Shown piece after piece: positions 1-60,922 of a stretch of DNA of 64,000 bases. Source of the DNA: Macrostomum lignano (Eukaryota); assembly GCA_002269645.1 (NCBI GenBank), contig NIVC01001010.1, positions 62,001 to 126,000 of the forward strand. Direction: 5' to 3'. The first letter of the stretch is position 1. Each line of letters opens with the position of its first letter. The translations under genes and the position numbers were made by a program. The notes beneath the pieces were generated by a model that was not told the origin of the DNA, did not search any database, and saw nothing but the letters and a program-made list of their open reading frames with translations.

Positions 1-118
1 TCTTCGTAGCCGCCTTCTCTACACTCGACTCATCGCGAGATGCACACGGTTCGCTGTCGCCAGCGTCAGCATCAGCAGAAGATCCCTCTGCTTGTGGGAT
101 GGTCACGTCGCTGCCCAT
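1..118 (-). CDS. Repeated exon copy 0 (truncated by the window edge) of the chromodomain gene exon array
   Basis: Same sequence as 711-1097; acceptor ttgtgcag|ATG with ATG at 118; continues off the left edge. Confidence 0.55.
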   Translation of the reverse strand, partial: MGSDVTIPQAEGSSADADAGDSEPCASRDESSVEKAATK

Positions 119-164
119 CTGCACAATGATTGATTTTGATGAACTAATGTAAACATATTATGAC

Positions 165-521
165 TCAATGAGGATTCAGCTGGATCCCATGTCTGAAAGT
201 CTGTTTGGCAGTCGGTGCTTGAAGCACCCACAGTCAATGTGAAACATTCAATGAGGGTTTAGCTGGACCCCATGTCTGAAAGTATGTTTGGCAGTCGGTG
301 CTTGAAGCACCCACAGTCAATGTGAACGACAATCAATGAGGGTTTAGCTGGACCCCATGTCTGAAAGTATGTTTGGCAGTCGATGCTTGAAGCACCCACA
401 GGCAATGTGAAACATTCAATGAGGGTTTAGCTGGACCCCATGTCTGAAAGTATGTTTGGCAGTCGATGCTTGAAGCACCCACAGTCAATGTGAAACATTC
501 AATGAGGGTTTAGCTGGACCC
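165..521. repeat. 89-91 bp satellite block (about 4 units)
   Basis: Unit aatgagggtttagctggaccccatgtctgaaagtatgtttggcagtcgRtgcttgaagcacccacagtcaatgtgaaacattc read directly. Confidence 0.95.
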
Positions 522-710
522 GCGACAAATATGCTGAAATTTGATTGATTGTGCTGACTTGGCATACGTCATGATAAAGTTTGCTTTTTTACAATCGAAA
601 CTAAGACATTGAAAGCTGCAGCATATTTTTGGCCCAATAAAAATGATATTCATTAAGTAAAGCGAATGCACTTTTCCAGCGTTAGTGTAACTCAACTCAG
701 CAATGCTCAC

Positions 711-1097
711 CGATTCAAAATGCTGACGCTGTGGGGACGGTTTCCGGTCTTGTATTTTGTTAGCAGATGACGTGATCATGAGATCAGCAGCACTTGAGTC
801 GGATTCCTCAACCATAGCATTCTCCTTCGATGACTGGAGCGCCAAGGTACTAGGAGAGCTCTTCTTGTCTCCAGGATGGTTTTTCCGGGTTTGTCCAGCA
901 GCCGCTGCCTCTTGAGTAGCTCTCGACACCCTGGCCGATGCTGAGAGCTGTTCACGCGACTTATGAACGGAAGTCGTCTTCTTCGTAGCCGCCTTCTCTA
1001 CACTCGACTCATCGCGAGATGCACACGGTTCGCTGTCGCCAGCGTCAGCATCAGCAGAAGATCCCTCTGCTTGTGGGATGGTCACGTCGCTGCCCAT
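711..1097 (-). CDS. Repeated 387-nt phase 0-0 exon copy 1 (MGSDVTIP...QRQHFES, Ser/Ala/Lys-rich low complexity)
   Basis: Acceptor aatcattgtgcag|ATG, donor TCG|GTGAGC, 129 codons open; the 197-aa track ORF is this exon plus intron read-through. Confidence 0.6.
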
Positions 1098-1143
1098 CTG
1101 CACAATGATTGATTTTGATGAACTAATGTAAACATATTATGAC

Positions 1144-1417
1144 TCAATGAGGATTCAGCTGGATCTCATGTCTGAAAGTCTGTTTGGCAGTCGGTGCTTG
1201 AAGCATCCACACTCAATGTGAACGACAATCAATGAGGGTTTAGCTGGACCCCATGTCTGAAAGTATGTTTGGCAGTCGATGCTTGAAGCACCCACAGGCA
1301 ATGTGAAACATTCAATGAGGGTTTAGCTGGACCCCATGTCTGAAAGTATGTTTGGCAGTCGATGCTTGAAGCACCCACAGTCAATGTGAAACATTCAATG
1401 AGGGTTTAGCTGGACCC
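1144..1417. repeat. 89-91 bp satellite block (about 3 units)
   Basis: Same unit as 165-521. Confidence 0.95.
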
Positions 1418-1606
1418 GCGACAAATATGCTGAAATTTGATTGATTGTGCTGACTTGGCATACGTCATGATAAAGTTTGCTTTTTTACAATCGAAACTAA
1501 GACATTGAAAGCTGCAGCATATTTTTGGCCCAATAAAAATGATATTCATTAAGTAAAGCGAATGCACTTTTTCAGCGTTAGTGTAACTCAACTCAGCAAT
1601 GCTCAC

Positions 1607-1993
1607 CGATTCAAAATGCTGACGCTGTGGTGACGGTTTCCGGTCTTGTATTTTGTTAGCAGATGACGTGATCATGAGATCAGCAGCACTTGAGTCGGAT
1701 TCCTCAACCATAGCATTCTCCTTCGATGACTGGAGCGCCAAGGTACTAGGAGAGCTCTTCTTGTCTCCAGGATGGTTTTTCCGGGTTTGTCCAGCAGCCG
1801 CTGCCTCTTGAGTAGCTCTCGACACCCTGGCCGATGCTGAGAGCTGTTCACGCGACTTATGAACGGAAGTCGTCTTCTTCGTAGCCGCCTTCTCTACACT
1901 CGACTCATCGCGAGATGCACACGGTTCGCTGTCGCCAGCGTCAGCATCAGCAGAAGATCCCTCTGCTTGTGGGATGGTCACGTCGCTGCCCAT
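1607..1993 (-). CDS. Repeated 387-nt exon copy 2
   Basis: Identical splice signals; differs from copy 1 by a synonymous TCC/TCA change. Confidence 0.6.
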
Positions 1994-2039
1994 CTGCACA
2001 ATGATTGATTTTGATGAACTAATGTAAACATATTATGAC

Positions 2040-2395
2040 TCAATGAGGATTCAGCTGGATCCCATGTCTGAAAGTCTGTTTGGCAGTCGGTGCTTGAAGC
2101 ATCCACACTCAATGTGAACGACAATCAATGAGGGTTTAGCTGGACCCATGTCTGAAAGTATGTTTGGCAGTCGGTGCTTGAAGCACCCACAGTCAATGTG
2201 AAACATTCAATGAGGGTTTAGCTGGACCCCATGTCTGAAAGTATGTTTGGCAGTCGATGCTTGAAGCACCCACAGGCAATGTGAAACATTCAATGAGGGT
2301 TTAGCTGGACCCCATGTCTGAAAGTATGTTTGGCAGTCGGTGCTTGAAGCACCCACAGTCAATGTGAAACATTCAATGAGGGTTTAGCTGGACCC
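2040..2395. repeat. 89-91 bp satellite block (about 4 units)
   Basis: Same unit as 165-521. Confidence 0.95.
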
Positions 2396-2584
2396 GCGAC
2401 AAATATGCTGAAATTTGATTGATTGTGCTGACTTGGCATACGTCATGATAAAGTTTGCTTTTTTACAATCGAAACTAAGACATTGAAAGCTGCAGCATAT
2501 TTTTGGCCCAATAAAAATGATATTCATTAAGTAAAGCGAATGCACTTTTCCAGCGTTAGTGTAACTCAACTCAGCAATGCTCAC

Positions 2585-2971
2585 CGATTCAAAATGCTGA
2601 CGCTGTGGTGACGGTTTCCGGTCTTGTATTTTGTTAGCAGATGACGTGATCATGAGATCAGCAGCACTTGAGTCGGATTCCTCAACCATAGCATTCTCCT
2701 TCGATGACTGGAGCGCCAAGGTACTAGGAGAGCTCTTCTTGTCTCCAGGATGGTTTTTCCGGGTTTGTCCAGCAGCCGCTGCCTCTTGAGTAGCTCTCGA
2801 CACCCTGGCCGATGCTGAGAGCTGTTCACGCGACTTATGAACGGAAGTCGTCTTCTTCGTAGCCGCCTTCTCTACACTCGACTCATCGCGAGATGCACAC
2901 GGTTTGCTGTCGCCAGCGTCAGCATCAGCAGAAGATCCCTCTGCTTGTGGGATGGTCACGTCGCTGCCCAT
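2585..2971 (-). CDS. Repeated 387-nt exon copy 3
   Basis: Identical splice signals; one E to K change (DSKPC). Confidence 0.6.
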
Positions 2972-3017
2972 CTGCACAATGATTGATTTTGATGAACTAA
3001 TGTAAACATATTATGAC

Positions 3018-3881
3018 TCAATGAGGATTCAGCTGGATCCCATGTCTGAAAGTCTGTTTGGCAGTCGGTGCTTGAAGCATCCATACTCAATGTGAACGAC
3101 AATCAATGAGGGTTTAGCTGGACCCCATGTCTGAAAGTATGTTTGGCAGTCGATGCTTGAAGCACCCACAGGCAATGTGAAACATTCAATGAGGGTTTAG
3201 CTGGACCCCATGTCTGAAAGTATGTTTGGCAGTCGATGCTTGAAGCACCCACAGTCAATGTGAAACATTCAATGAGGGTTTAGCTGGACCCCATGTCTGA
3301 AAGTATGTTTGGCAGTCGGTGCTTGAAGCATCCACACTCAATGTGAACGACAATCAATGAGGGTTTAGCTGGACCCCATGTCTGAAAGTATGTTTGGCAG
3401 TCGGTGCTTGAAGCACCCACAGTCAATGTGAAACATTCAATGAGGGTTTAGCTGGACCCCATGTCTGAAAGTATGTTTGGCAGTCGGTGCTTGAAGCATC
3501 CATACTCAATGTGAACGACAATCAATGAGGGTTTAGCTTGACCCCATGTCTGAAAGTATGTTTGGCAGTCGATGCTTGAAGCACCCACAGTCAATGTGAA
3601 ACATTCAATGAGGGTTTAGCTGGACCCCATGTCTGAAAGTATGTTTGGCAGTCGATGCTTGAAGCACCCACAGTCAATGTGAAACATTCAATGAGGGTTT
3701 AGCTGGACCCCATGTCTGAAAGTATGTTTGGCAGTCGGTGCTTGAGGCACCCACAGTCAATGTGAACGACAATCAATGAGGGTTTAGCTGGACCCCATGT
3801 CTGAAAGTATGTTTGGCAGTCGGTGCTTGAAGCACCCACAGTCAATGTGAACGACATTCAATGAGGGTTTAGCTGGACCCC
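3018..3881. repeat. 89-91 bp satellite block (about 10 units)
   Basis: Same unit; ends at ggacccc|acctc. Confidence 0.95.
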
Positions 3882-3983
3882 ACCTCTCAGATTGGAATGC
3901 TTTCGAATGAAATCGTGCCTTAAGATTCGATTGCGGAATGAAGTGGCATACATCTAAGTAACAGTTAAGTCAGGAGTTCCTAC

Positions 3984-4024
3984 CGTCATCGTTTTCTGCT
4001 GCTCGTTCGGCGGGAAGCATTTTT
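3984..4024 (-). CDS. Chromodomain gene linker micro-exon (EKCFPPNEQQKTMT), phase 1 to phase 0
   Basis: tctaac branch-like motif plus ctctctttc...ttccag acceptor; donor ACG|GTAGGA; restores frame between the chromodomain exon and the repeated exons. Confidence 0.5.
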
Positions 4025-4145: not shown

Positions 4146-4216
4146 CGCAAGATGAATGCAGACTTTGAATCACACTTGTTGGTATGTTGCTTCGTGGCTC
4201 CCAAGACTTTTGATTG
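4146..4216 (-). CDS. Chromodomain C-terminal half exon (SNQKSWEPRSNIPTSVIQSLHSSC)
   Basis: Acceptor catattttag|, donor TGCG|GTAAGA; SWEPRSNI matches the chromodomain TWEPxxNL motif; phase matches the upstream exon. Confidence 0.75.
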
Positions 4217-4327: not shown

Positions 4328-4421
4328 CTTGAATATCCTTTCCACTTTATGTAGAGCTTCTTTTTCGTGCACTTGATAATCCTTTCAACGTAGAAACGCC
4401 TACTAGCTTGGGGCTTTTTTT
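4328..4421 (-). CDS. Chromodomain N-terminal half exon (KKPQASRRFYVERIIKCTKKKLYIKWKGYS)
   Basis: Donor TCAAG|GTGAGT; FYVERII...YIKWKGY matches the chromodomain YxVExI...YLVKWKGY motif. The 5' boundary (gcatgcag|) is less certain. Confidence 0.75.
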
Positions 4422-5559
4422 CTGCATGCTGGCGTGTTAAGGACAACCAGTTGGCAGAACCAACTTGTGAGGCCAACTAATTCAAGTTGAAGTCTTGTTT
4501 GAGGTTGGAAATTGGTCTGTTTTTGTGATTAGGAAGATGTTTACGTTGACCCTCTATTTCAGACCCTCGACCTTGATGATTAAGCCAGCTACAGACCAAT
4601 AAGAGCCCTTCGGAGGGAGAGAGGGAAATGACCAACGTTCAAACGGACGGACAGTAAGGAATGAAAGTTAAACCACCCCATTCTTGACTGTCCGTTTAAG
4701 CACAGGATTGGCTGATGAGCTTTGGGGTTTGCTTGGACCTCAGTCAGGATGGTTCGGCTTTTAAAGTTTCATTATTCAGCCCTATCCTATCGGTTGCCGA
4801 AGCTGTAAACGTTTGAATATAAAGCACACAAACTATTTTAGGAGTCCGTGCTGTAAGCAAGGCTCTTGTCTTTATGTCTCCTTAAATTAAGCAATGCTGC
4901 AAATGCAGCATGAGAAATGCATAGCATGCATAGCCTTCAATCTAGGTTCTCTAAAATCAACACTTGATGAAGCATTTATTCCAAGCATGATAGCGACAGG
5001 AATATTAGTGAACAGTTTTGTTTCAGAAACCACAAGTAATAAATAAAACCATCTCGTGAATTTTTAGTTATTATGGGCTACATCGGAGCTTCGTTTGTAG
5101 CAGAAACTTCAATTTTATTTTACATTCCAATCACTTCGGCCTGTTTAGTAAGCTTGCTTCTGCAACTCAAAAATGCCCCAATGTGCTTAAACACGCATTT
5201 TAAAGAGCTATATCATAAAAAAATAAGTTTTCATACATACAAAACATACACTATGTATGTGTGAAATTTGTCTGTTTTCGGGTTAGGTGGACCTTAGCGA
5301 TGTGGTTTGGGTGGACTGTGTTAAAGGTCCTTGTAAACTAAAATACTCAATACTTAAAATCTAAACTACTTTAAGTAGAGGGACTTTGGCCACAGTAATG
5401 GCTGCCTTTCAGACTATGCAGTCAGTCAAGATAAACCCTCTCTGTACTTCCCATCAAGGAAATTTAAAGTGGTCCACTTAAAGGGTCCATGTAATCGAAA
5501 GGTCCCGCTAACGAGGCTTTTAAACCGACGGAGAGTCTACGCAAACACACATACACTAA

Positions 5560-5560
5560 C

Positions 5561-5629
<69 letters not shown>

Positions 5630-5660
5630 GACAGACAGACAGAGAGACAGACAGACAGAC

Positions 5661-5703
<43 letters not shown>

Positions 5704-5758
5704 GACAGACAGACAGACAGAGAGACAGACAGACAGACAGAGAGACAGACAGACACTA

Positions 5759-5839
<81 letters not shown>

Positions 5840-5868
5840 GGCAGGCAGGCAGACAGACAGACAGACAG

Positions 5869-5919
<51 letters not shown>

Positions 5920-5946
5920 GGGACACTCTGACTGACAGACACTCTA

Positions 5947-6007
<61 letters not shown>

Positions 6008-6044
6008 GAGACAGACAGACAGACAGAGGGACAAACAGACAGAC

Positions 6045-6079
<35 letters not shown>

Positions 6080-6081
6080 GG

Positions 6082-6115
<34 letters not shown>

Positions 6116-6125
6116 GACAGACAGA
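5560..6125. repeat. (ACAG)n/(AGAC)n microsatellite
   Basis: Direct reading. Confidence 0.95.
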
Positions 6126-6305
6126 CTCTCTGTGGCTTGGGGGGGGGGCGGGGTTGGCCCTCATGGCTGTGAATCGAACGACAACTCCAAGCCCCAAATG
6201 CATGTGTTTGCGCACCGAATCGAACCAGGGGCTGTCGTGGGCGTTCACCGCTATCGAAGCTGAGCACTCCGCCCCTTCTTCGAGACACGTTCGTATGAGT
6301 GCCCA
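6126..6305 (-). mobile_element. Possible short dispersed (SINE-like) repeat
   Basis: 24/25-nt identity with 18901-18925 plus scattered downstream matches; B-box-like GGTTCGATTC on the minus strand at 6217-6226; abuts a microsatellite. Confidence 0.3.
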
Positions 6306-12579: not shown

Positions 12580-13737
12580 TCACCGACACTCACAGACACT
12601 CATAGCAAGTCACCAACACTCACAGAGACTCACCGACACTCACAGAGACTCACAGAGACTCGAAAAAGACTCACCAACGCTCACAGAGACTCACCAACAC
12701 TCACAGAGACTCACCGACACTCACAAAGACTCACAGAGACTCACAAAGACTCACCAACGCTCACAGAGACACACCAACACTCACAGAGACTCACCGACAC
12801 TCACTGAGACTCATCGACACTCACAGAGACTCACCGACACTCACAGAGACTCACCAACACTCACAGAGACTCACCAACACCCACAGAGACTCACCAACAC
12901 CCACAGAGACTCACCAACACTCACAGAGACTCACCAACACCCACAGAGACTCACCAACACTCACAGAGACTCACCAACACTCACTGAGACTCACCGACAC
13001 TCACTGAGACTCACCGACACTCACTGAGACTCACCAACACTCACTGAGACTCACCGACACTCACTGAGACTCACCGACACTCACAGAGACTCACCAACAC
13101 TCACAGAGACTCACCAACACTCACTGAGACTCACCGACACTCACTGAGACTCACCGACACTCACAGAGACTCATCGACACTCACAGAGACTCACCAACAC
13201 TCACTGAGACTCATCGACACTCACAGAGACTTACTGGCACTCACAGAGACTCACCAACACTCACAGAGACTCACCAACACTCACAGAGACTCACCAACAC
13301 TCACAGAGACTCACCAACACTCACAGAGACTCACCAACACTCACAGAGACTCACCAACACTCACAGAGACTCACCAACACTCACAGAGACTCACCAACAC
13401 TCACAGAGACTCACCAACACTCACAGAGACTCATCGACACTCACAGAGACTTACTGGCACTCACAGAGACTCACCAACACTCACAGAGACTCACCAACAC
13501 TCACAGAGACTCACCAACACTCACAGAGACTCACCAACACTCACAGAGACTCACCAACACTCACAGAGACTCACCAACACTCACAGAGACTCACCAACAC
13601 CCACAGAGACTCACCAACACTCACAGAGACTCACCAACACTCACAGAGACTCACCAACACTCACAGAGACTCACCAACACTCACAGAGACTCACCAACAC
13701 TCACAGAGACTCACCAACACTCACAGAGACTTACACA
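12580..13737. repeat. 20-bp minisatellite
   Basis: Unit cactcacagagactcaccaa. Confidence 0.95.
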
Positions 13738-14112
13738 GTCTGGCCTAGTGGTTAACAGGAAAGATGATATTTTCAAGCACGACCTAGCACTTATGATGAA
13801 GGAAGCTGTGTGGAGCCTTGAGAGCCTGTCGCAGATTGTTTGGCCGCAGTTCCTGAGTAGCATTTTAACAAAGCCCGTGATGGACAGGCAAAGGTCTGAG
13901 CAGCAGGAAGCTGCGAGTGCTCGGCTGGAGTGACTGTGAACGAAATGGCTTGATTGGCGGCAGTTTATCACACAGTGGAATGATCGTGGAAAGCAGGTAC
14001 GAAAAGAACTGAAAATGCATCGAATCTGTTCAGGATTTATTGCTTGCAATGTTAGACAGGTAAAGGCAGAGTAACGAAGCGGTGGCAACACTTTCCAGAA
14101 AGATTTAAATGC

Positions 14113-14294
<182 letters not shown>

Positions 14295-14839
14295 AGGCCC
14301 AGCCAGAGAAGCAGCTCCATATGTCCAGCAGGCCTGCATTAGCCAGGGTTATCCCCATTATCTCCATCAGTTGCCCTTGGGCTGGCAGGTAATTGGCGCT
14401 AGCAGACAGTCTGCATGGCTACAGAAAGCAGTCAAATGAAAGAGTTCCTTTGCCAGTGAATTCGTGGGACAGCTAGGGGGTCGTTTTGAATAAAATTAGA
14501 GATCCCCGAGCAATCAGGACTTGCTTGGTCACCCCTGCTGTCCCGGGGCCAGCCGCAGGCGGAGGCGGCAGTGAATGGGAGACCCACCGTGTCTCTGTAT
14601 GATGAAAGACTCGAGCAGAAAGGGGCCCTCGAGTTGGCTTATCCGTCCGGGATCTGAAATTGAAGGTCGAGGATTAACACACTTGGTCTCGCCGTGCACT
14701 TGAGGCTGAAAGACGTGAATAGGGGTTGTTCAATGAAGAGGGAGATAGAGGACTGGGTGGATAGTGGAAACCAGGGATAATGCAGAAATTATTCTTTCAC
14801 AACGAAGAGCAAAAAGTGGGTTAAGTCGAGTTAGAAACG

Positions 14840-15290
14840 GAGAGGTAGGCGAATGGGCGATTGAGAAGTAGAGTGAAGGAGATGGAGAAGTAGGATGGGG
14901 GAGACGGAGGAGTAGAGAGGGGGTAGAGAATTAGAGAGCGAGATTTGAGTAGTAGAGTGAAGTAGACGGAGAATAGAGTGAGGGAGTCAGAGAAGTAGAG
15001 AGACGGAGAAGTAGAGTGGGAGATGGAGAAGTAGTGTGAGGGGATGGAGAAGTAGAGAAAAGTAGAGTGAGGGAGAGATGGAGAAGTAGAGTGAGGGATG
15101 AGGGAGAGATGAAGAAGTAGTGTAAGGGAGAGATGAAGAAGTAGAGTGAGGGAGGGATTGAGAAGTAGAGTGAGGGAGAGATGGAGAAGTAGAGTGAGAT
15201 TGAGAAGTAGAGGTGAAAGAGCTGAGAGACAGAGAAGTAGGGTGGGTAGATAAAAACAGAGGAAGAGACAGAAGTCGAAGAGTAGGGTAA
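14840..15290. repeat. Degenerate purine-rich minisatellite
   Basis: Recurring gagaagtagagtgagggagagatg motif. Confidence 0.8.
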
Positions 15291-15603
15291 GAATTCGAAG
15301 CAAATAGAAGCCAAAAGTGATGGGTAGGGGAAAGCAGTGAGCACGGAGCTCAGCCAGGGAGTGGCCAGAGACTGCTCAAGGGCCTCAGCCTATCCAATCT
15401 GCAGCCAGGAGCTGAAAAAAACAACAGAGAGAAAGCGCATCGGTACAAAAGACGCGACCGGCCCTCCCGCTGCGATTCTCTCCGCTTCTCCGCTGGCCAC
15501 AATATTTCCAAAGGCTTGTTCAATTCGATCAGGAGAAACTGCAAACAGCATCGTAATTAACTGTTAAACCAGCAATCAGTGCAGAAAGCCACCCCAGCCC
15601 GCC

Positions 15604-15708
15604 ATGCCAGCTGCCCGTCTGCAGATTCTTCTATTGGCCGGCTCGATGCTTCTGGCTGCCGCCAGCCTTGCCCAGCTTCTTCCAGGAGCCGAGGCCGCGC
15701 CGCACTCC

Positions 15709-15741
<33 letters not shown>

Positions 15742-15927
15742 GAGCTACTCGAGCGACTCCTCTGCGCCACCGAGGCTGCGCCCTGCCGATGGCCCCGACG
15801 CCTCCAGCCCATCGTCGACGACGACCAGGTTGGCGGCGGCGAGGAGGCGGCGACGGTGAGCGACGGCGTCCCGCTGTTCCGCCGAGGCAAGAAGCAGCCG
15901 CCGAGGAAGCCGCCGGGCATCTGGTGA
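15604..15927 (+). CDS. Candidate secreted peptide / neuropeptide precursor, 107 aa
   Basis: GCCGCCATG start context; hydrophobic N-terminus MPAARLQILLLAGSMLLAAASLA; RR, G-KK and RK processing-like sites; AATAAA at 16033-16038. Confidence 0.6.
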
Positions 15928-16032
15928 AGCAGCGGACCGAGCGGCCGGCCGAGCTCCGCGAATTGACTGAGCACCTGTTTGGACGCAGCCCCTGCCAGCG
16001 CTGACTGTTAGCGCAATGACCCACTGATGGCT

Positions 16033-16038
16033 AATAAA
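16033..16038 (+). promoter_or_regulatory. Putative polyadenylation signal of the peptide-precursor gene
   Basis: AATAAA about 105 nt after the TGA. Confidence 0.45.
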
Positions 16039-16259
16039 TATAAAACCACAGCTAAAATAGCCTGAGAGATCGCTCACCATATTGCTTCTCTTTAATTTGT
16101 TGCTGATGTCTTCGAGTTGCAACTTACTACTGTTGGTAGCTACTAGTGATCTATAAACTAAATATTTGCGCCAGTACTGTACGCAGAGGCAGGCTCTCAT
16201 ACACACGCTCGGGCTCGTGTACAGCGGCCCGGGCTTTCTAATCGTCAGGCATGTACACT

Positions 16260-18890
16260 GTCTGTGCCTTGGTGCTTCCTCAGTAAAGAGAGCCGACGGC
16301 TCGCTCACTGAGAACCCAGGAGAAACACTGGAAGCAATGCTAACAGCGTTTTTCCCGAACGAGCCAGCCAGGCCCGACCCCTTGATCACTCAGTGGTTTC
16401 GGCTGACTCAATCATCACGGAGGACCGCGTCACTAAAGCAGTCTCCTCCTTCAAACCCTTCAAATCCACAGGACCGGACGGCGTTGTGCCAGTCTTCCTG
16501 CGTGAGGCGGTGAAATGCACCGGTTTCCTGCGGAACCTTTGCCGGCTCCTGGAAGCTTGCATTGTACTCGGCTTTGTTCCGAAAACCCTGGACCGAGGCC
16601 AGGGTGGTTTTTATCCCCAAGCCCGGCCGACCGGACTACCGGTCCATTAAATCCTTCAGACCAATCAGCCTCACCTCCTCACTGGTGAAGCTGTTGGAGA
16701 GACTGGTGCTTTGGCGCCTCCTCTCTGTAGAACTGAAGAACAAGCCGCTCAGTGAGAACCAGCACGCCTTTCGGGCAGGCAGGTCCACGGAGAGCGCGCT
16801 TCACGTCTTGGTCGACATGCTGGAGAAAGCCGTTCTTGGTAATGGCTACGCTCTCGCTGTCTTCCTCGACATTGTTGGAGCCTTCGATAATGTCCTCTTT
16901 GAGGCTTTTGACAGAGCTCTACGTGCTAGAGGAACCCACTCGCACCTCACCCGGTGGATCGTGTAAATGATCAGCCACCGCGCACCTGCGGGGCCACCAA
17001 CGGACGGTAACCGTCTGCAAAGGCAGCCGCCAAGGCGGTGTTCTCTCTCCAGTTCTCTGGAACATGGTCATCGATGAGCTCCTTCAGGACAGCCATCTTG
17101 ACCCCATCCTCAAGGTCGGTTACACCGATGACGTCATAGCCATAGCATCCGGACCGTCACCCGAAAGCCTTAGGGATCTTCTGCAAAACTTTATTCGCTC
17201 TGCTGAACAATGGGCGGACAGGTGCGGCCTCAGGCTCTCCGAGACAAAAACTGTCGCGATCATGTTCACCAGCAGGGTCAACTGGCGTATTCGCCCACTA
17301 AAGCTTTACGGGGTGGAAATCCCATCCTTCAAGCGAACCAAGTGTCTCGGCATTACGCTGGACCACCGGCTGAGCTGGTCCACCCACGTCCAGGCCAAAA
17401 CCAAAAAAGCCCTCGCGATTCTTGCGCAGTTGCGCAGAGCCGTCGGCACCACCTGGGGCCTCACCCCGAAGCGACTCTGTTGGATCTATACCGCAATGGT
17501 CCGGCCGGCCGTTACTTACGCCGGCCTGGTCTGGACCTGCGCCTTGCAGATTAAAACATGCCACGAAGCCCTTAAAAAGGTGCAGGGACGCGCGTGCTGC
17601 ATGATTCTGAATGCCCCGCTCTCTGCTCCCTTTGACGGCCTCAACGCCTTTCTCTGCCTCCCGCCTCTGGACATCTTCGTCGGTCGCGAGGCAGCTAAAA
17701 CCACCCGCCGGCTCGTCGAGGCTGGTGTTAACTTCAAGCCACAAAGAGCGATGGCGAAGCGCAAGCTCCTGCCGCACTCTGACCTGTGCCTTAAAGTTCT
17801 GGAGGAGAGTGGGAGTGCGGCTGTCCTTTCGGACGCTGAGCCGCGCTCCCTCAATCTCTACCAACGCTTCAAGGTCACTATCCCCTCTAGGGAGAACGCC
17901 AACGACAGCTGGGCCCCTCAGGAGGTTCACTGCTTCACTGACGGATCCTCCAAAGACGGTTTATCCGGCTTTGGAGTCTGCATCCTTAACGGCCGCGTGA
18001 TCGCCACTCACGCCCAACACACTGGCAGACTCTCCAGCGTCTTCTAGAACGAAGTCCTTGCCATCAGCTCCTGTGCAGCTGAGCTCCACTGCAGGGACTT
18101 CAAAGACAGAAGAATCTTCTTCCACTCTGACAGCCAGGCCGCCTTGCAGGCCCTGTGCCACACCACTACGAACTCCCGAACAGTCCGCGACTGTATCGGG
18201 CAGCTCAACAAGCTGGCTCGGAGAAACACCGTCCGGCTCCTGTGGATCCCAGGACACGCCGGCTTCAAAGGTAACGAGCTCGCCGACTCCCTCGCCAAGG
18301 CGGGTAGCTCCAGCTCGCTCCTTGACCCCGTGCCTCTGGCCCCCATCCCCGCCAGGGTCATTAATCGTCAGATTAACGACTGGGCGGACATCCTGCACTT
18401 GCGCAGATGGGATGGCATTTCCAATGCCGCCAATCCCATGCGGCAGTGCCCAATCCGTCCCTCAAGCAAAAATCTGAATCAAAATCGAAAAGATATCCGC
18501 GCTCTCACTATGGCCTTCACAGGTCACGGTTGCTTTGCCAGGCACTGTTTCCTCCGAAGTGTTCACCGGAGCGAACTCTGCCCTTTCTGCAACCTCGAGA
18601 ACAAAGACGCCAAGCCGAGTCCGGCTCAACCACCTCGGGCCCAACCCGTCCCTGGACGACGCTTGCCGGCCCGAGAACATCCCACGGCTCATCCGGTTCC
18701 TCCGGGCCACCAAGCGAGCCTCCGTCTTTCCCACCGAAGACAACGCTGCAGACAGGACCGGCAGACCTCCCTGACCGGCCCCGCGCCCTAGCCTATGCGG
18801 GACTTTCAGGGATTAGCGGAATGGGCGACGCTCGCCTCCCCGCTGCGTCTTCGGACCGCCCTGCAGCTAAGTCAAGTAAGTCAAGTAAGC
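16260..18890 (+). mobile_element. 5'-truncated, decayed non-LTR retrotransposon (RT + RNase H, LOA/Lian-like)
   Basis: SFKPFKSTGPDG, ARVVFIPKPG, FRPISLTS, QHAFRAGRST, FLDIVGAFD, GVLSPVLWN, YTDD; RNase H FTDGS, SDSQAAL, WIPGHAGFKGNELAD; partial C-terminal Cys/His knuckle; frameshifts near 16390 and 16590, stop/deletion near 16965, TAG at 18045; tail taagtcaagtaagtcaagtaag. The 5' boundary is approximate; no endonuclease is seen. Confidence 0.9.
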
Positions 18891-27828: not shown

Positions 27829-28171
27829 GGCATCAGAAGGTTTAGAGTCGGTGAGCGGACTCAGAAAAAGTAGTGAACAGGCAGGCATAGCGAACTAGAA
27901 GCAGCAACAGGGAGTCAAATAAGTGGAGGTGAAGGGCCGCCCCTCCAGCCTGACAACTGACATTTTTGACGTCACGGCTGACTGGCTCTGACAAAATAAT
28001 CATTTTTTGGCCGCGCCGATGGAGGATGAAGGGGATCAGAATCCCGCCTCACTGCTCGGGGGAACAGTATCCGACTGGACTCGGCATGCTTGAGTCAGTC
28101 AGTCAGCCAGTTATGAAAGCGTGGCATGCGCGGGGTACAAGAGAGTCACGCTTGGCAGATTGCTGCTGCTA

Positions 28172-29105
<934 letters not shown>

Positions 29106-46651: not shown

Positions 46652-47960
46652 CGAGGGTCACTCAGAAAGTTCTTAGCTTGAACACGAAAACAGCAACAAA
46701 TGAACTAAAAAACGACTACAAGTGCTCAAAATACTCTCCACCGGCATTGATACAGGCTTGCATCCTGTGAAACCAGCTGTTGAAGCACTGCCGCCAATCC
46801 TCATCCCGGAGCTCCTCGATGATGTTTTTAAACTCATTCACAGCTTCTTCCGGTGAAGAAAAGACCTGGCCCTTCAGAATCTCCTTGCACTTCGGAAACA
46901 GAAAAAAGTCGCACGGTGCCAGGTCTGGACTGTAAGCAGGGTGAGTCATCAGCTGGACCCCACAGTCAGCCAGAAACTCCAGAGTTTGAGCCGCCGTGTG
47001 CGCGCTGGCGTTGTCGTGGTGCAGAAGCACCCCACGCATTCCGCACCTTGGGCGCCTCTGGCTCACAGCAGAAAAGACCTTGGGCAGGCAAACCGTTGTG
47101 TACCAGTCAGCGGTGACTGTCTGGCGATCTTCAAGTGAAACGGAAGCCACATGCCCAGTGCGCATGAAGAAACAGGCCACCATCTGCTTGCCGACACTCC
47201 GGCTGCGTCGAAACTTGGTGGGGCTGTCCTCGTCTCCAAAGGTCCACATGGCTGACTGGCGCTTGCTTTCGGGGTCGTATTGATAAATCCAGGTCTCATC
47301 GCCCGTGAGGATGTCCCAGATACGCCGGCTGGTCCCGGATTCGAATTTCTGCAGCATGAATCGGCACCAAGCCACCCTGGTGTCCTTCTGCACGTCCGAC
47401 AGCTGATGGGGATCCACCGGGAAGCCAGCTTCCGCACTCCAAGGTGTTCGTGCATAATGGCGTGCACACTCCCCGATCCAATACCGATCTCCTGCTGGAT
47501 CTGCTGGTAGGTCACTCGCCGGTCAGCGGCAATCATGCTGGACACAGCGCAGATATTTTCTGGAGTCACTGCGTCACAGGGTCTCCCGGATCGATGTTCA
47601 TCTTCGAGGCTTTCTCGACCTCGGCGAAACTCAGCGAACCAGTTTTTGACGGTTGCGTATGAAGGACATACATGGGTGAAAACGTTCTGTAAAGTTTGAT
47701 ACGATTCGGCCGGCGACTTGCCTTGCTTGAAGTGCAGGTACATCATTGCTCTGAAGTCGCGATTTTCCAGCTTCATTGTTGAATTGAAGATCTCAGGGGG
47801 TGAACTGACTTTAACTCGCTGCAGTGGACTCAAAAGTGGCTGCTTCTGTTTGAAATTTTTGCTGCGATACTTTTAAAAGTTGGTCTTTACCATAGACAAA
47901 TTTCATGCTTCTACGTCTCGTGGATCCTACTCAGGCTAAAGACTTTCTGAGTGACCCTCG
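46652..47960 (-). mobile_element. Full-length mariner (DD34D) DNA transposon, 1309 bp
   Basis: TIRs cgagggtcactcagaaagttcttagcttga / cgagggtcactcagaaagtctttagcctga; TA duplication at 46650-46651 and 47961-47962; inserted in a satellite. Confidence 0.97.
46716..47776 (-). pseudogene. Mariner transposase with a single 1-nt deletion (353 aa if repaired)
   Basis: HTH region, WIPH, TGDETW, HHDNASAH, YSPDLAPCD with 34 residues between D2 and D3; frameshift in the G run at 47408-47411. Confidence 0.93.
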
Positions 47961-52925: not shown

Positions 52926-53351
52926 ACGCTCATCATAGTGACTATTCGAACACAGGGTGTTCTAACCCGCGACTCCAGCGTCTACAGAAGCACCAACGAT
53001 GGCCGGACCTTTGTCAACATCACCGCCAAGATCCTTGAAGCCGGCGCTACCAGTTCCGCCCTTCTAGTGTCCCAATCGCTGGGCCTGAAGCGAAATCCAG
53101 CCCAGCCAGCCAGAATCTACCTGGCCTGCCACGACCCCGCTAAGCTGGGCGGCGCCACCGGACTTCTCTATTACACTCTGGATGGCGGTGCCACCTGGCA
53201 CTTGTCCAGCCCCGGGTTTCCGGTCCAATCTGCTCAGATTTTGTTTCACACTGACAAGCCCGATTGGCTGCTTGCCCAGGCCGGTGACAAGCTGTATTTG
53301 TCAGTTAATGCCGGTCAGGATTGGCGTTTGATTAAGAAGCGCGTGTTCAAG
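52926..53351 (+). CDS. sort1: Sortilin exon B
   Basis: Asp-box motifs YRSTNDGRTF, YYTLDGGATW, YLSVNAGQDW; tttcag| and AAG|GTGAAT. Confidence 0.88.
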
Positions 53352-53374
53352 GTGAATTAATTGGTTTGAGAGTG

Positions 53375-54200
53375 ACTGTCTAACAGGTTCTTGGAGCCTA
53401 GATGTCTAACAGGTGCTGGGAGCCTAGATGTATAGCAGGTGCTAAGAGAGGTGTTTAACAGGTGCTGGGAGCCTAGATGTCTAACAGGTGCTGGGAGCCT
53501 AGATGTATAGCAGGTGCTGAGAGAGGTGTTTAACAGGTGCTGGGAGCCTAGATGTCTAACAGGTGCTGGGAGCCTAGATGTATAGCAGGTGCTGAGAGAG
53601 GTGTTTAACAGGTGCTGGGAGCCTAGATGTCTAACAGGTGCTGGGAGCCTAGATGTCTAACAGGTGCTGGGAGAGTAGGTGTCTAGCAGATATGAGACTC
53701 CCGTCTAACATGTACAGACCAGTGTCGAACAGATGTCTAACAGATGAAGAATCCCCTGTCTAACAGATGTACAGGCCAGTGTCTAACAGATGCAGAATCC
53801 CCTGTCTAACAGGTGTACAGGCCATTGCCTAACAGATGCAGAATCCCCTGTCTAACAGATGTACAGGCCAGTGTCTAACAGATGCAGAATCCCCTGTCTA
53901 ACAGGTGTACAGGCCATTGCCTAACAGATGCAGAATCCCCTGTCTAACAGATGTACAGGCCAGTGTCTAACAGATGCAGAATCCCCTGTCTAACAGATGT
54001 ACAGGCCAGTGTCTAACAGATGCAGAATCCCCTGTCTAACAGGTGTACAGGCCAGTGTCTAACAGATGCAGAATCCCCTGTCTAACAGATGTACAGGCCA
54101 GTGTCTAACAGATGCAGAATCCCCTGTCTAACAGGTGTACGGGCCAGTGTCTAACAGATGCAGAATCCCCTGTCTAACAGGTGTACAGGCCAGTGTCTAA
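53375..54200. repeat. 23-26 bp minisatellites filling sortilin intron B-C
   Basis: Units gtctaacaggtgctgggagcctagat, then tctaacagatgcagaatcccctg alternating with tctaacaRRtgtacaggccagtg. Confidence 0.95.
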
Positions 54201-54264
54201 CACGGCAGTGAAGCGGCAGTCTGAAGTAATCAGTTGTAAAGATTCCCCACCTACTAAACCGCAG

Positions 54265-54531
54265 GCCTCCTGGGGCGTTAGTGCCGATGATAAGGACAGT
54301 ATCTACGCTGCATTTGATGGCGAAGCCAGCTTCGTATCTCTGCTGCGCGACGGCGTCGCTTCGAGCAATCACAGGCTGCCCGGCCGGCAACTCGCGAAGC
54401 TGACGGACTTCACTGCCGGGTCCAATAATTGGAAAACACTGGCTGAGAAAATCTACTCTTATAACAATAAGGACGGCTTTATTTTTATATCCAAATCGGA
54501 CGAGGGCAAGGCCGAGTCCAGGCATTTAGAG
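54265..54531 (+). CDS. sort1: Sortilin exon C
   Basis: ccgcag|GCC TCC TGG ... GAG|GTATCG; KTLAEKIYSYNNKDGFIFIS. Confidence 0.8.
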
Positions 54532-54589
54532 GTATCGTCTTTATTTTCACAGTCGCCTTAGTGGCTAAGCTCGCATTGATAAATTCTCT

Positions 54590-55360
54590 CTTTCACAACC
54601 ATAAGTCTCACTTTCACAACCATAATTCTCACTTTCACAACCATTATTCTCACTTTCACAACCATAATTCTCACTTTCACAACCATAATTCTCACTTTCA
54701 CAACCATAATTCTCACTTTCACAACCATAATTCTCACTTTCACAACCATAATTCTCACTTTCACAACCATAATTCTCACTTTCACAACCATAATTCTCAC
54801 TTTCACAACCATAATTCTCACTTTCACAACCATAAGTCTCACTTTCACAACCATAATTCTCACTTTCACAACCATAATTCTCACTTTCACAACCATAATT
54901 CTCACTTTCACAACCATAATTCTCACTTTCACAACCATAATTCTCACTTTCACAACCATAATTCTCACTTTCACAACCATAATTCTCACTTTCACAACCA
55001 TAATTCTCACTTTCACAACCATAATTCTCACTTTCACAACCATAATTCTCACTTTCACAACCATAATTCTCACTTTCACAACCATAATTCTCACTTTCAC
55101 AACCATAATTCTCACTTTCACAACCATAATTCTCACTTTCACAACCATAATTCTCACTTTCACAACCATAATTCTCACTTTCACAACCATAATTCTCACT
55201 TTCACAACCATAAGTCTCACTTTCACAACCATAATTCTCACTTTCACAACCATAATTCTCACTTTCACAACCATAATTCTCACTTTCACAACCATAATTC
55301 TCACTTTCACAACCATAATTCTCACTTTCACAACCATAATTCTCACTTTCACAACCATAA
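54590..55360. repeat. 21-bp minisatellite filling sortilin intron C-D
   Basis: Unit ctcactttcacaaccataatt, highly homogeneous. Confidence 0.95.
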
Positions 55361-55479
55361 TAGCAGTGACCTCTAACGTTTGACCTTCAACTTCCCTGCT
55401 TAATTGCTACTTTCATAGCTTCAATTCCCACTTGCACAATTGAAACCCTAAATCATATATTCACAATTATAATTGGCAG

Positions 55480-55872
55480 GTATCAACAGACTGCGGCAAG
55501 ACATTCGTTCGCACTCAGCTGCCTTCAGCTACTCCGGACAGATTCTTTGTCATCTTGGACACCAGCGATGGTCTGGCCTTCGTGCACATCGACGCTGGCA
55601 ACTACCTGGGCTACGGCACTCTGTACACCTCCAACAGTCTTGGCCAGGTGTTCTCCAAATCCCTGGAGAGGAATTTCTACCCTCCGCTTGGCGGCAGCAG
55701 CGACTTCTACAAGGTTGAGTCAATGCGCGGCGCCTTCCTGAGCACCGTGCTGCACTCTGACGCGTCCATGCACTCCGTGATCACGCATAATAGGGGCGCG
55801 GTGTGGCGGCACCTCAGTAAACCTGACGGTGTCACGTGTACGACTACTGATGGCGGCCCGTGCTATCTGCAG
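55480..55872 (+). CDS. sort1: Sortilin exon D
   Basis: VSTDCGKTF, GTLYTSNSLGQVFSKSLERN, DFYKVESMRG, SVITHNRGAVW closely follow sortilin. Confidence 0.92.
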
Positions 55873-55894
55873 GTGAGACCTCTGAGATAGAAGT

Positions 55895-56420
55895 TCTAAT
55901 CTCATGGGTGAGATCTCGGAGACAGTAGGTCTAATCTCATAGGTGAGATCTCGGAGACAGTAGGTCTAATATCATGGGTGAGATCTCGGAGACAGTAGGC
56001 CTAATCTCATGGGTGAGATCTCGGATACAGTAGGTCTAATCTCATGGGTGAGATCTCTTAGTAGTTAAATCTCATGGGTGAGATCTCGGAGACAGTAGGT
56101 CTAATCTCATGGGTGAGATCTCGGAGACAGTAGGTCTAATATCATGGGTGAGATCTCGGAGACAGTAGGTCTAATCTCATGGGTGAGATCTCTTAGTAGT
56201 TAAATCTCATGGGTGAGATCTCGTGAGACAGTAGGTCTAATCTCATGTGTGAGATCTCGTGAGACAATTTCTAATCTGATGGGTGAGATCTCTTAGTAGT
56301 GATATTTCATGGGTGAGATCTCGTGAGACAGTCGGTCTTATCTCATGGGTGAGATCTCGGAGACAGTAGGTCTAATCTCATAAGTGAGATCTCCGAGACA
56401 GTCGGTCTAATCTCATGGTC
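55895..56420. repeat. About 35-bp minisatellite filling sortilin intron D-E
   Basis: Unit ctaatctcatgggtgagatctcggagacagtaggt. Confidence 0.95.
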
Positions 56421-56447
56421 TAATATCACCGCCCAACCGCCTGTCAG

Positions 56448-56855
56448 GTGGCCTCCTATTACAGCATCAGCCGCAGTGTGCCGGCCGACCAGCCCAGATC
56501 AGCGCCTAGTGCCGTCGGCCTTCTTATCGTTCACGGCCACACCGCCGCCAAACTGCAGTCGAACCCAGCCGACGTGTACATCAGCAGCGACGGCGGCTAT
56601 TCCTGGTACCTGGCTTTGAAAGGCCCGCATCGCGTGCAGATTGGCAACAATGGCAATTTTCTTGTAGCGGTTGAGAAATCTGCTAACGGCAGCTCGCCGC
56701 AGGTTGTTAAATTTAGCACCGACGCTGGCCGGTGCTGGCACAGCCATCGGTTCACTACGGAGGACTACGTGTTCACTGGCCTGCTCACCGAGCCGGGCAA
56801 TCGGGCACTCACAGTTGCTATCTGGGGCTACGTTAGCGAGCTGCATCACTGGCGG
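56448..56855 (+). CDS. sort1: Sortilin exon E
   Basis: SAPSAVGLLIVHG, DVYISSDGGYSW, GPH, FSTDAGRCW, TGLLTEPG. Confidence 0.93.
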
Positions 56856-56924
56856 GTGAGCATTCAATTATCACCTGTTAAAACCATATGTGCGTGGTCT
56901 ACTGATTTCTGTTCTAGTGTTGTC

Positions 56925-57420
56925 AGCCGTAGTGTACTTTGGGGGGGGGTCGATTGACCCCTCTATTTAGCGTTGCCAGCCATTGTGTACATTAGGGGGT
57001 CGATTGACCCCTCTATTTAGTGTTGTCAGCCATAGTGTACATCGGGGGTCGATTGACCCCTCTATTTAGTGTTGTCAGCCATAGTGTACATCGGGGGTCG
57101 ATTGACCCCTCTATTTAGTGTTGTCAGCCATAGTGTACATCGGGGTCGATTGACCCCTCTATTTAGTGTTGTCAGCCATAGTGTACATCGGGGGTCGATT
57201 GACCCCTCTATTTAGTGTTGTCAGCCATAGTGTACATCGGGGGTCGATTGACCCCTCTATTTAGTGTTGTCAGCCATAGTGTACATCGGGGGTCGATTGA
57301 CCCCTCTATTTAGTGTTGTCAGCCATAGTGTACATCGGGGGTCGATTGACCCCTCTATTTAGTGTTGTCAGCCATAGTGTACATCGGGGGGTCAATTGAC
57401 CCCTCTATTGAAGTTGTCAA
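56925..57420. repeat. 49-bp hairpin-containing minisatellite (sortilin intron E-F)
   Basis: Unit tgtacatcgggggtcgattgacccctctatttagtgttgtcagccatag. Confidence 0.95.
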
Positions 57421-57834
57421 AAATTTAGTGGGGAAGTCAATTGACCTCTGTATAGGTTTGATTGCCCACTATTTAAGGTCTGAAAACAGCACGGGCCCAC
57501 TCTGTGCGCTCTCCTTTGCCTTTGCTAGCGATGATCAACAATATTATTTTTGCCTTCAGAGACCATGCGTGCACTGCGAACTTATGTTTCGCCAGGACCA
57601 GCTCTTGCTGTTATCAATATCAGTCTAACACTGACTTATGCAGTTAGCACTGGCCCTGACTAAAATTTATTCGCTCTTATCTCAGACATACTTTCTTGTT
57701 TGGTATCTGCGCATTGAGCATGGACTGGCCTTGCCATGCCGGAATGTGCAATCTGTATTTTATGTCTACTTGGGACTGCGTTAGTGTGTAGCTTTCGATT
57801 CTGTATATTGCGTCTCTCCGTTCTCTCCCAGTCT

Positions 57835-59945: not shown

Positions 59946-59987
59946 CTCTACCTCTAACTCCCCATTGTGCCCTCCCATCCGCCGCAG

Positions 59988-60395: not shown

Positions 60396-60430
60396 GTGAG
60401 CGAGGCCATTTTGCTGAGGCCTATTCTGCA

Positions 60431-60900: not shown

Positions 60901-60922
60901 CCCCAATCTCACCCCCAACCAG

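What the first reader, a model, noticed from the sequence alone, without database searches (positions are those of the whole stretch)
1..3984. Tandem array of a symmetric coding exon, each copy separated by its own satellite block
Seen: a ~620-bp block containing a 387-nt exon (cag|ATG...TCG|GTGAG, phase 0-0) recurs at least four times with periods 979, 896 and 978 bp; the spacing differs only through the number of 89-91 bp satellite units (about 4, 3, 4, then 10). Copies differ by single substitutions (one synonymous, one E to K). Inference: satellite-mediated unequal exchange is amplifying a 129-aa disordered module, giving a chromatin protein whose length can vary by copy number or by exon skipping without frameshift.
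Basis: partly seen in the sequence, partly recalled or inferred. Interest (0 to 1): 0.75.

Follow-up and report, generated by a model that had tools for sequence, protein, structure and literature searches.

The report
Tandemly amplified in-frame exon, flatworm gene
A 387-base exon coding for a floppy 129-residue stretch is repeated head to tail (9 copies here, 2 and 24 at two sister loci) inside a flatworm gene for a chromodomain plus recombinase-like protein, so the protein's length could change with copy number; this kind of repeat is already known from other genes.

Summary
The window is Macrostomum lignano (assembly Mlig_3_7, contig NIVC01001010.1). On the minus strand, a 622-bp block (46 bp, a 387-nt phase 0/0 exon, 189 bp) recurs with periods of 979, 896 and 978 bp. 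Blocks are separated by 3, 4 or 10 satellite units. The units are 82-85 bp, not 89-91 bp.

The contig continues left of the window and shows nine modules, then a longer exon whose first ~262 nt match the module. Upstream, still inside the window, lie two chromodomain exons and a 41-nt exon in frame with the modules. Two other loci hold the same gene with 2 and 24 modules.

They also skip some modules.

The rest of the protein has a tyrosine-recombinase-like fold. The ~9-kb unit sits in three unrelated contexts, each time between (GTCT)n tracts, so it is probably transposon-derived.

All 35 modules are at least 99% identical and show no sign of selection. As assembled, this locus has two 1-nt homopolymer frameshifts. 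How many modules reach the mRNA is unresolved.

Verdict: a new member of a known kind, an exon-bearing intragenic VNTR.

The parts
5561..6126 (.). (ACAG)n, read as (GTCT)n on the gene strand. It forms the upstream boundary of the unit shared by the three loci.
   Evidence: TRF. Homology among loci A, B and C begins at the inner edge of this tract, and the flanks beyond it are unrelated.
4428..5560 (-). About 1.13 kb of upstream region, conserved at 98-100% among the three loci.
   Evidence: Alignment A4; blastn.
4328..4427 (-). Coding exon 1: the ATG at 4427-4425 and the first half of the chromodomain. The A run at 4415-4421 has 7 A here against 8 in loci A and C, so the ATG is out of frame with the chromodomain as assembled.
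   Evidence: P0002 and P0004 begin MQKKKPQASRRFYVERII.
4146..4216 (-). Coding exon 2: the second half of the chromodomain (..SNQKSWEPRSNIPTSVIQSLHSSC), with sites ttttag| and |gtaaga.
   Evidence: Pfam Chromo scores 29.2 bits (cut-off 25.1) on P0002.
3984..4024 (-). Coding exon 3: 41 nt encoding EKCFPPNEQQKTMT. It ends in phase 0 at |gtagga and joins in frame to the modules.
3018..3882 (.). Satellite array in intron 3: 10 units of 83-85 bp plus a partial unit.
2585..2971 (-). Module exon B1 (387 nt, 129 aa, carries K23).
2040..2395 (.). Satellite array of 4 units plus a partial unit, inside the 591-nt intron between B1 and B2. It is flanked by the 189-bp segment (2396-2584) and the 46-bp segment (1994-2039).
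1607..1993 (-). Module exon B2.
1144..1417 (.). Satellite array of 3 units plus a partial unit, inside the 509-nt intron between B2 and B3.
711..1097 (-). Module exon B3 (synonymous variant at codon 121).
165..521 (.). Satellite array of 4 units plus a partial unit, inside the 592-nt intron between B3 and B4.
1..118 (-). The 5' part of module exon B4, cut by the window edge. The contig continues with B4-B9, the long exon and the last exon (L002 7210-16594).
   Evidence: L002 1-7327 equals window 7327-1 at 100% identity; module map.

Best explanation
This is a young, still-changing intragenic macrosatellite on the minus strand. Each 0.9-1.0 kb unit carries one complete cassette exon (387 nt, phase 0-0, consensus cag| and |gtgag sites), and most of its intron is an 83-bp satellite.

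The exon codes for a Ser/Ala/Lys/Glu-rich, predicted disordered 129-residue linker. The linker lies between an N-terminal chromodomain (three small exons at 4427-3984) and a large C-terminal core with a tyrosine-recombinase-like fold, which is encoded left of the window.

Shown:
- The gene order.
- Nine modules at this locus, 2 and 24 at two other loci.
- At least 99% identity among all 35 modules.
- Locus-specific variants and a 3-module higher-order repeat.
- Annotated RNA-seq-guided CDSs that join exon 3 to a module, a module to a module, and a module to the long exon at exactly these junctions, while skipping other modules.

Inferred:
- The first module arose by partial duplication of the 5' ~262 nt of the long exon, joined to 314 bp of other sequence that supplies the rest of the frame and a donor site. 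The reverse history (fusion of the last module with a downstream exon) is equally possible.
- The array then grew and shrank by unequal homologous exchange between misaligned units. Gene conversion kept copies alike, and separate gains and losses of satellite units changed the intron length.
- The protein's linker length therefore depends on genomic copy number and on how many modules the spliceosome includes.
- The host gene is probably the gene of a dispersed, transposon-like unit bounded by (GTCT)n.
For: Structure in the window.

Identity of the sequence and extension to the left.

Copy numbers at three loci.

Alignment of 35 modules with locus-specific variants.

Higher-order unit B2-B4 = B5-B7 (2770-bp shift, 99.74% identity).

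Exact reconstruction of annotated proteins: P0003 is B7 (partial) + B8 + long exon + last exon, skipping B9. P0002 is exons 1-3 + A2 + long exon + last exon, skipping A1.

The GenBank annotation derives from RNA-seq (StringTie/TACO/TBONE, de novo transcripts, TransDecoder; PMC5730564).

Splice motifs match the species consensus GT[G/A]AG and CAG (PMC8629364).

Disorder of the module in the AF2 model.

Chromodomain Pfam hit.

Recombinase-like fold: the top eight Foldseek hits are XerH, XerD, an integrase and topoisomerase IB (best probability 1.00, E 3.5e-3). XerA is on top for the other model.

Module and long exon are identical for nt 1-240, diverge over 241-262, and are unrelated beyond.
Against: No reads were examined here. 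The transcript support is second-hand, through the annotation pipeline. Short reads cannot count identical modules, and every annotated model contains at most two.

Models skip modules (A1, B9, and 23 of 24 at locus C). This may be real skipping or collapse of repeats during transcript assembly.

At this locus the assembled sequence has A7 instead of A8 after the start codon and a CCC-to-CC deletion in module 7. A chromodomain-to-recombinase ORF through all nine modules therefore does not exist as assembled; this is either a PacBio homopolymer error or a decaying copy.

Variable sites give no sign of constraint. The exon has 6 sites in 387 nt (5 non-synonymous, 1 synonymous), against 3-4 in 235 nt of flanking intron.

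Copy numbers in long identical arrays of a 2017 PacBio assembly may be inexact.
Confidence: 0.72

Rival explanations
1. The array is essentially intronic. The modules are pseudo-exons that are mostly skipped, so mature mRNA carries none to two of them whatever the genomic copy number. The amplification would then be neutral satellite dynamics with no effect on the protein.
For: All annotated proteins hold one or two modules plus the long exon, even at the 24-module locus. There is no sign of purifying selection. One module has a weaker TAG acceptor and one has a frameshift.
Against: Models do include modules and a module-to-module junction. All 35 copies keep consensus splice sites and, but for one, an open frame. 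Short-read transcript assembly is expected to collapse identical repeats, so a low count in the models is not evidence of skipping.
Confidence: 0.3
2. Each cag|ATG is used as a spliced-leader trans-splice acceptor, or as an internal start. The locus would then yield N-terminally truncated proteins that begin at a module's Met and lack the chromodomain.
For: Every module starts with ATG directly after the acceptor. [quoted passage not shown] Older models P0005 and P0006 start at MGSDV. At this locus the upstream frame is broken, so only such starts would give a long ORF.
Against: The acceptor GTGCAG fits the trans-splice motif [T/C]TNCAG only in part. Models P0002 and P0004 join exon 3 to a module in cis. 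No SL-containing read was seen or could be looked for here.
Confidence: 0.12
3. The array, or its length, is an assembly artefact of a repeat-rich PacBio assembly.
For: The copies are near-identical and the assembly is known to be redundant and difficult (PMC5730564). Two homopolymer indels suggest local base errors.
Against: Three loci with different flanks each carry an array with its own diagnostic variants and its own period. Ordered variant patterns within the array are not what collapse or random expansion would give. Older independent gene models also contain repeated module fragments.
Confidence: 0.08

Closest known systems
LPA kringle IV type 2 coding VNTR (human apolipoprotein(a))
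   Same: Tandem genomic units each carry complete, in-frame exon(s) with their own splice sites. Copy number sets protein length. [quoted passage not shown]
   Different: Here the unit is 0.9-1.3 kb with a single exon. The intron is mostly an 83-bp satellite. The module is a disordered linker, not a folded domain. Variation is shown between three dispersed loci of one assembly, not between individuals. Multi-copy inclusion in mRNA is not yet shown.
Ordinary tandem exon duplication (including mutually exclusive exon clusters)
   Same: An internal exon is duplicated in tandem with symmetric phase, so inclusion or skipping keeps the frame.
   Different: Known cases usually have 2 to a few diverged copies that are used alternatively. 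Here there are 2-24 near-identical copies that are apparently spliced in series.
Crypton-type tyrosine-recombinase DNA transposons (Kojima and Jurka 2011, PMC3212892)
   Same: The gene contains introns and encodes a protein with a tyrosine-recombinase-like fold. Copies are dispersed in unrelated contexts without terminal repeats. Homologues are patchily distributed (flatworm, fish, metagenome and SRA contigs).
   Different: There is no sequence match to Phage_integrase or DUF3504, which animal Cryptons do match. The His of the HxxR motif appears to be replaced (STKLRKY). The protein has an N-terminal chromodomain. The unit is bounded on both sides by (GTCT)n.
Chromodomain-integrase fusions of chromoviruses (Ty3/gypsy)
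   Same: A chromodomain is fused to a DNA-recombining enzyme of a mobile element, which suggests chromatin-directed targeting.
   Different: There the chromodomain is C-terminal to a DDE integrase. Here it is N-terminal to a tyrosine-recombinase-like core, separated from it by the amplified linker.

Membership tests
Exon-bearing intragenic VNTR / macrosatellite | Head-to-tail genomic units, each with a complete exon and both splice sites | tested here: met
   Nine units at this locus, all with ..ag|ATG and TCG|gtgagc.
Exon-bearing intragenic VNTR / macrosatellite | Unit exon length a multiple of three, with the same phase at both ends | tested here: met
   387 nt, phase 0-0. Serial splicing gives one open frame. 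The exception is module 7, at 386 nt.
Exon-bearing intragenic VNTR / macrosatellite | Copy number varies between alleles or copies of the gene | tested here: met
   2, 9 and 24 modules at three loci of one assembly. Variation between individuals was not tested.
Exon-bearing intragenic VNTR / macrosatellite | Several units present in series in the mature mRNA or protein | tested here: inconclusive
   The annotated CDS P0003 joins B7 to B8. No long cDNA reads are available, and models hold at most two modules.
Chromodomain proteins (Pfam PF00385) | Significant match to the Chromo profile | tested here: met
   P0002 scores 29.2 bits against a cut-off of 25.1. The window encodes the same two exons with one residue changed. 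Exon 1 alone scores only E 0.48.
Tyrosine recombinases / Crypton transposons | Two-domain tyrosine-recombinase fold | tested here: met
   Foldseek on two AF2 models. XerH has probability 1.00 and E 3.5e-3, followed by XerD, an integrase and topoisomerase IB as the top eight hits. XerA is the top hit. The E-values are modest.
Tyrosine recombinases / Crypton transposons | Catalytic R-H-R-Y tetrad | tested here: inconclusive
   Conserved in ten homologues: R790 (NRRRxxE), K839, R911 (KLRK), H937, H942 and Y946. The His three residues before R911 is Thr. Residues were assigned by motif inspection, not by superposition.
Tyrosine recombinases / Crypton transposons | Sequence match to Phage_integrase or DUF3504 profiles | tested here: not met
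   No such Pfam hit, even at E up to 10. PDB sequence searches were empty.
Tyrosine recombinases / Crypton transposons | Several copies in unrelated genomic contexts with defined ends | tested here: met
   Three loci share only the stretch between two (GTCT)n tracts. Only three copies were seen, and empty sites were not examined.
SL trans-spliced first exon | SL-to-exon junction in RNA; acceptor motif [T/C]TNCAG | not testable with these tools
   The acceptor is GTGCAG, a partial fit (PMC8629364). No read data are available.

The most novel reading that the evidence does not exclude
The unit could be an active or recently active member of an undescribed lineage of tyrosine-recombinase elements. 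This lineage would carry an N-terminal chromodomain and integrate into (GTCT)n microsatellites. Its chromodomain-to-recombinase linker would be encoded by an exon-bearing macrosatellite that expands independently in each inserted copy (2, 9, 24). Each copy of the element would then make a recombinase with a different tether length between its chromatin reader and its catalytic core.
Probability: 0.25. Interest if true: 0.65.

Novelty: new member of a known kind. Interest (0 to 1): 0.45.

Why it matters
This is a clean, very young example of exon amplification caught in progress. Three copies of one gene in one genome carry 2, 9 and 24 in-frame copies of the same exon, with higher-order repeat structure that records the exchanges. 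That makes it a usable natural system for two questions: how the spliceosome handles long runs of identical cassette exons, and how disordered linkers grow.

It also flags a practical problem. Short-read-based annotation of this repeat-rich model flatworm under-represents such genes, since the models hold one or two modules or start in mid-exon.

Separately, the host gene points to a chromodomain plus tyrosine-recombinase-like unit lying between (GTCT)n tracts, which may be an undescribed mobile-element lineage.

No function for the amplification is shown, and the variation pattern looks neutral.

Tried and rejected
1. Rfam and tRNA scans of the window found nothing. Pfam on the module found nothing.

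2. First idea: cag|ATG marks the first coding exon, and the array is a repeated gene 5' end lying downstream of another gene copy. This was prompted by P0001, in which the module precedes the chromo exon. I rejected it for three reasons. P0002, P0003 and P0004 place the chromodomain first and the modules internal. The CDSs were reconstructed exactly from the DNA. The odd order in P0001 is explained by an internal restart of the 5' region inside the locus C array.

3. Possible homology between the 189-bp intron segment and the flank downstream of exon 3: local score 33, against 22 +/- 4 for shuffles (maximum 35). This is not significant.

4. Source of the module's last 125 nt plus the 189-bp intron segment: no match elsewhere in L001, L002 or the window.

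5. Synteny of the three loci was rejected. Flanks beyond the (GTCT)n tracts do not align, and probes from locus A are absent from locus C.

6. Sequence-level identification of the C-terminal core failed. Only fold comparison gave a coherent answer.

7. An exact look-up of P0001 in the assemblies found nothing on record.
Full report
**1. Observation**

The repeat search finds four copies of the block, at 1-243, 980-1222, 1876-2118 and 2854-3096, spaced by 979, 896 and 978 bp. On the minus strand each full copy reads atcattgtgcag|ATGGGC...GAATCG|gtgagc, is 387 nt long, and translates to MGSDVTIPQAEG...QRQHFES (129 aa). Only this frame is open; the other five frames hold 3-10 stops.

The non-satellite block is 622 bp: 46 bp, the exon, then 189 bp. 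The three full copies differ at three positions only: E23K, one synonymous change at codon 121, and one intronic change.

Between the blocks lie arrays of 4, 3, 4 and 10 full satellite units plus a 22-24 bp partial unit.

**2. Where the window comes from, and what lies to its left**

The module's only database relative was a Macrostomum lignano fragment. An exhaustive HMMER search then found a 1184-aa protein, P0002. Its cluster has members on three contigs of assembly GCA_002269645.1, Mlig_3_7.

Locus L002 (contig NIVC01001010.1) matches window 7327-1 at 100% over its first 7327 bases. The window is therefore part of that contig, and L002 shows the sequence to the left of the window.

There the array goes on. 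There are nine modules in all (L002 4357, 5335, 6231, 7210, 8106, 9002, 9981, 10876, 11940). They are followed by a 793-nt exon (13342-14134) and a last exon (14433-16594). The 793-nt exon matches the module at 239 of its first 240 nt, diverges over nt 241-262, and is unrelated after that.

**3. Gene structure in the window (minus strand)**

- Exon 1, 4427-4328: the ATG and the first half of a chromodomain.
- Exon 2, 4216-4146: the second half of the chromodomain.
- Exon 3, 4024-3984: it ends in phase 0 and joins in frame to the modules, giving ...NEQQKTMT|MGSDV....
- Intron 3 holds the 10-unit satellite array.

So the modules are internal exons of a gene whose 5' end lies to the right of the array, inside the window. 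The first idea, that the array was a repeated first exon, came from the odd order in the old model P0001 and was dropped (see section 10).

**4. Other loci**

- Locus A (L001, NIVC01000850.1) has 2 modules plus the long exon.
- Locus B (this window) has 9.
- Locus C (L003, NIVC01001364.1) has 24, spread over 32 kb.

The array periods are locus-specific: 1312 bp at A, 896 and 979 bp at B, and mostly 1232 and 1318 bp at C. The arrays therefore differ in satellite unit number as well.

Locus C also contains an internal restart of the gene's 5' region. About 640 bp of upstream sequence, both chromodomain exons and exon 3 recur between modules 4 and 5. This explains why P0001 shows a module spliced to the chromo exon.

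**5. Variation**

An alignment of all 35 blocks shows at least 99% identity.

- Variable exon sites: E23K, V44I, S58T, S99C, P120T and one synonymous site. That is 6 sites in 387 nt.
- Variable sites in the 235 nt of flanking intron: 3-4.
- The ratio of 5 non-synonymous to 1 synonymous, and the equal density inside and outside the exon, give no sign of purifying selection. The numbers are small and the copies are very young.

S99C occurs only at locus C. P120T, the synonymous change and the intron +35 change occur only at locus B. The arrays therefore expanded, or were homogenised, separately at each locus.

At locus B the variant pattern and the intron lengths repeat every three modules: B2-B4 equals B5-B7, a 2770-bp shift at 99.74% identity. 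This is the footprint of an unequal exchange three units out of register.

All arrays begin with the same distinctive satellite unit next to the acceptor and end with the same partial unit. The duplicated segment was therefore [satellite, 46 bp, exon, 189 bp].

**6. Transcript-level evidence (second-hand)**

The GenBank annotation of Mlig_3_7 is a genome-guided transcriptome. It was built with StringTie and TACO on STAR-mapped RNA-seq, with BLAT-mapped de novo transcripts, TBONE and TransDecoder (PMC5730564).

I rebuilt two annotated proteins exactly from the DNA:

- P0003 is B7 (from just after its frameshift) + B8 + long exon + last exon, and skips B9.
- P0002 is exons 1-3 + A2 + long exon + last exon, and skips A1.

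Short reads cannot count identical modules, so the true number per mRNA is open. If all were included, the proteins would be about 1313, 2216 and 4151 aa at loci A, B and C.

Donor GTGAG and acceptor CAG match the species consensus (PMC8629364).

**7. The protein**

- Pfam finds a chromodomain at residues 14-47 of P0002, at 29.2 bits.
- In an AlphaFold model the module region has pLDDT about 30 and no secondary structure. Residues 420-985 are confidently folded.
- That core has homologues in M. lignano (55% identity), in a fish (Xiphophorus, 33% over 98% of the query) and on environmental or SRA contigs.
- No Pfam or PDB sequence match was found for the core.
- Fold comparison of two models puts tyrosine recombinases on top. 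These are XerA and XerH (probability 1.00, E 3.5e-3), followed by XerD, a staphylococcal integrase and topoisomerase IB.
- Conserved motifs (NRRRxxE, GKR, KLRK, HLGHS..VH..FY) fit the recombinase pattern, except that the His before the second Arg is missing.

**8. Context of the unit**

The three loci share only the stretch between two (GTCT)n tracts. This stretch comprises about 1.13 kb upstream of the ATG, the gene, and about 1.1-1.3 kb downstream. All flanks beyond the tracts are unrelated.

This pattern, together with the recombinase-like fold and the patchy distribution of homologues, suggests a transposon-derived unit that sits in (GTCT)n microsatellites. That is an inference from three copies. 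It fails the sequence test for Crypton membership, since there is no DUF3504 match (PMC3212892).

**9. State of this particular copy**

As assembled, locus B has A7 where loci A and C have A8 directly after the start codon (window 4415-4421). It also has CC instead of CCC in module 7.

Either change breaks the chromodomain-to-core frame. The annotated CDS P0003 begins just after the second frameshift.

Both changes are in homopolymers of a PacBio-based assembly. They may be sequencing errors, or this copy may be decaying.

**10. Explanation, rivals and verdict**

Best reading (confidence about 0.7): this is a real exon-bearing intragenic macrosatellite that grows and shrinks by unequal exchange. 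It lengthens a disordered linker in a chromodomain plus recombinase-like protein.

Rivals:

- The modules are mostly skipped, so the amplification has no effect on the protein (0.3; it overlaps with the main reading on the genomic side).
- Each module's acceptor takes a spliced leader and yields truncated proteins (0.12).
- The array is an assembly artefact (0.08).

Nothing shows that the exchanges take place in the satellite rather than in the 622-bp block, and nothing shows a function.

The closest known analogue is the LPA KIV-2 coding VNTR (PMC11462820). I therefore file this as a new member of a known kind, of moderate interest. The possibly new element lineage is the more novel lead.

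Noticed in passing
window 4415-4421 (minus-strand A run after ATG CAG): The run has 7 A here and 8 A at loci A and C. The annotated start codon is therefore out of frame with the chromodomain at this locus. This is either a homopolymer assembly error or a real frameshift.
   Followed up: partly
L002 9981-10366 (module 7, left of the window): A 1-nt deletion (CCC to CC) makes this module 386 nt long. The GenBank CDS P0003 starts right after it. Module 8 has a TAG acceptor instead of CAG.
   Followed up: partly
window 5561-6126; L001 8830-8866 and about 17770-17990; L003 8658-8870 and 47288-47467: The whole gene unit lies between two (GTCT)n tracts at three loci whose outer flanks are unrelated. 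This suggests a mobile unit associated with this microsatellite.
   Followed up: partly
L003 15398-16600: Inside the 24-module array of locus C, the gene's 5' region restarts between modules 4 and 5: upstream sequence, both chromodomain exons and exon 3. This is a larger unequal exchange, and it explains the odd UniProt fragment A0A1I8JL65.
   Followed up: yes
window 1-64000: 45 tandem-repeat arrays cover 44% of the window. The published genome-wide figure for simple and tandem repeats is 15%. Nearly every array has a different unit (4-58 bp), and many fill introns.
   Followed up: partly
window 16562-18791 (+): Retroelement remnant: reverse transcriptase (RVT_1, E 4.5e-16) and RNase H (E 5e-8) ORFs, split over several frames.
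   Followed up: partly
window 46716-47833 (-): Mariner/Mos1-like transposase (HTH_48, Transposase_1/DDE_3) split into two overlapping ORFs, so it is frameshifted.
   Followed up: partly
window 52938-61414 (+): Exons of a sortilin/VPS10-domain receptor gene (Sortilin-Vps10 and Sortilin_C, E down to 2e-29). Its introns are largely filled by minisatellites.
   Followed up: partly
window 28169-28600 (-): C2H2 zinc-finger coding exon whose open frame runs on into a 21-bp minisatellite (28560-29105).
   Followed up: no
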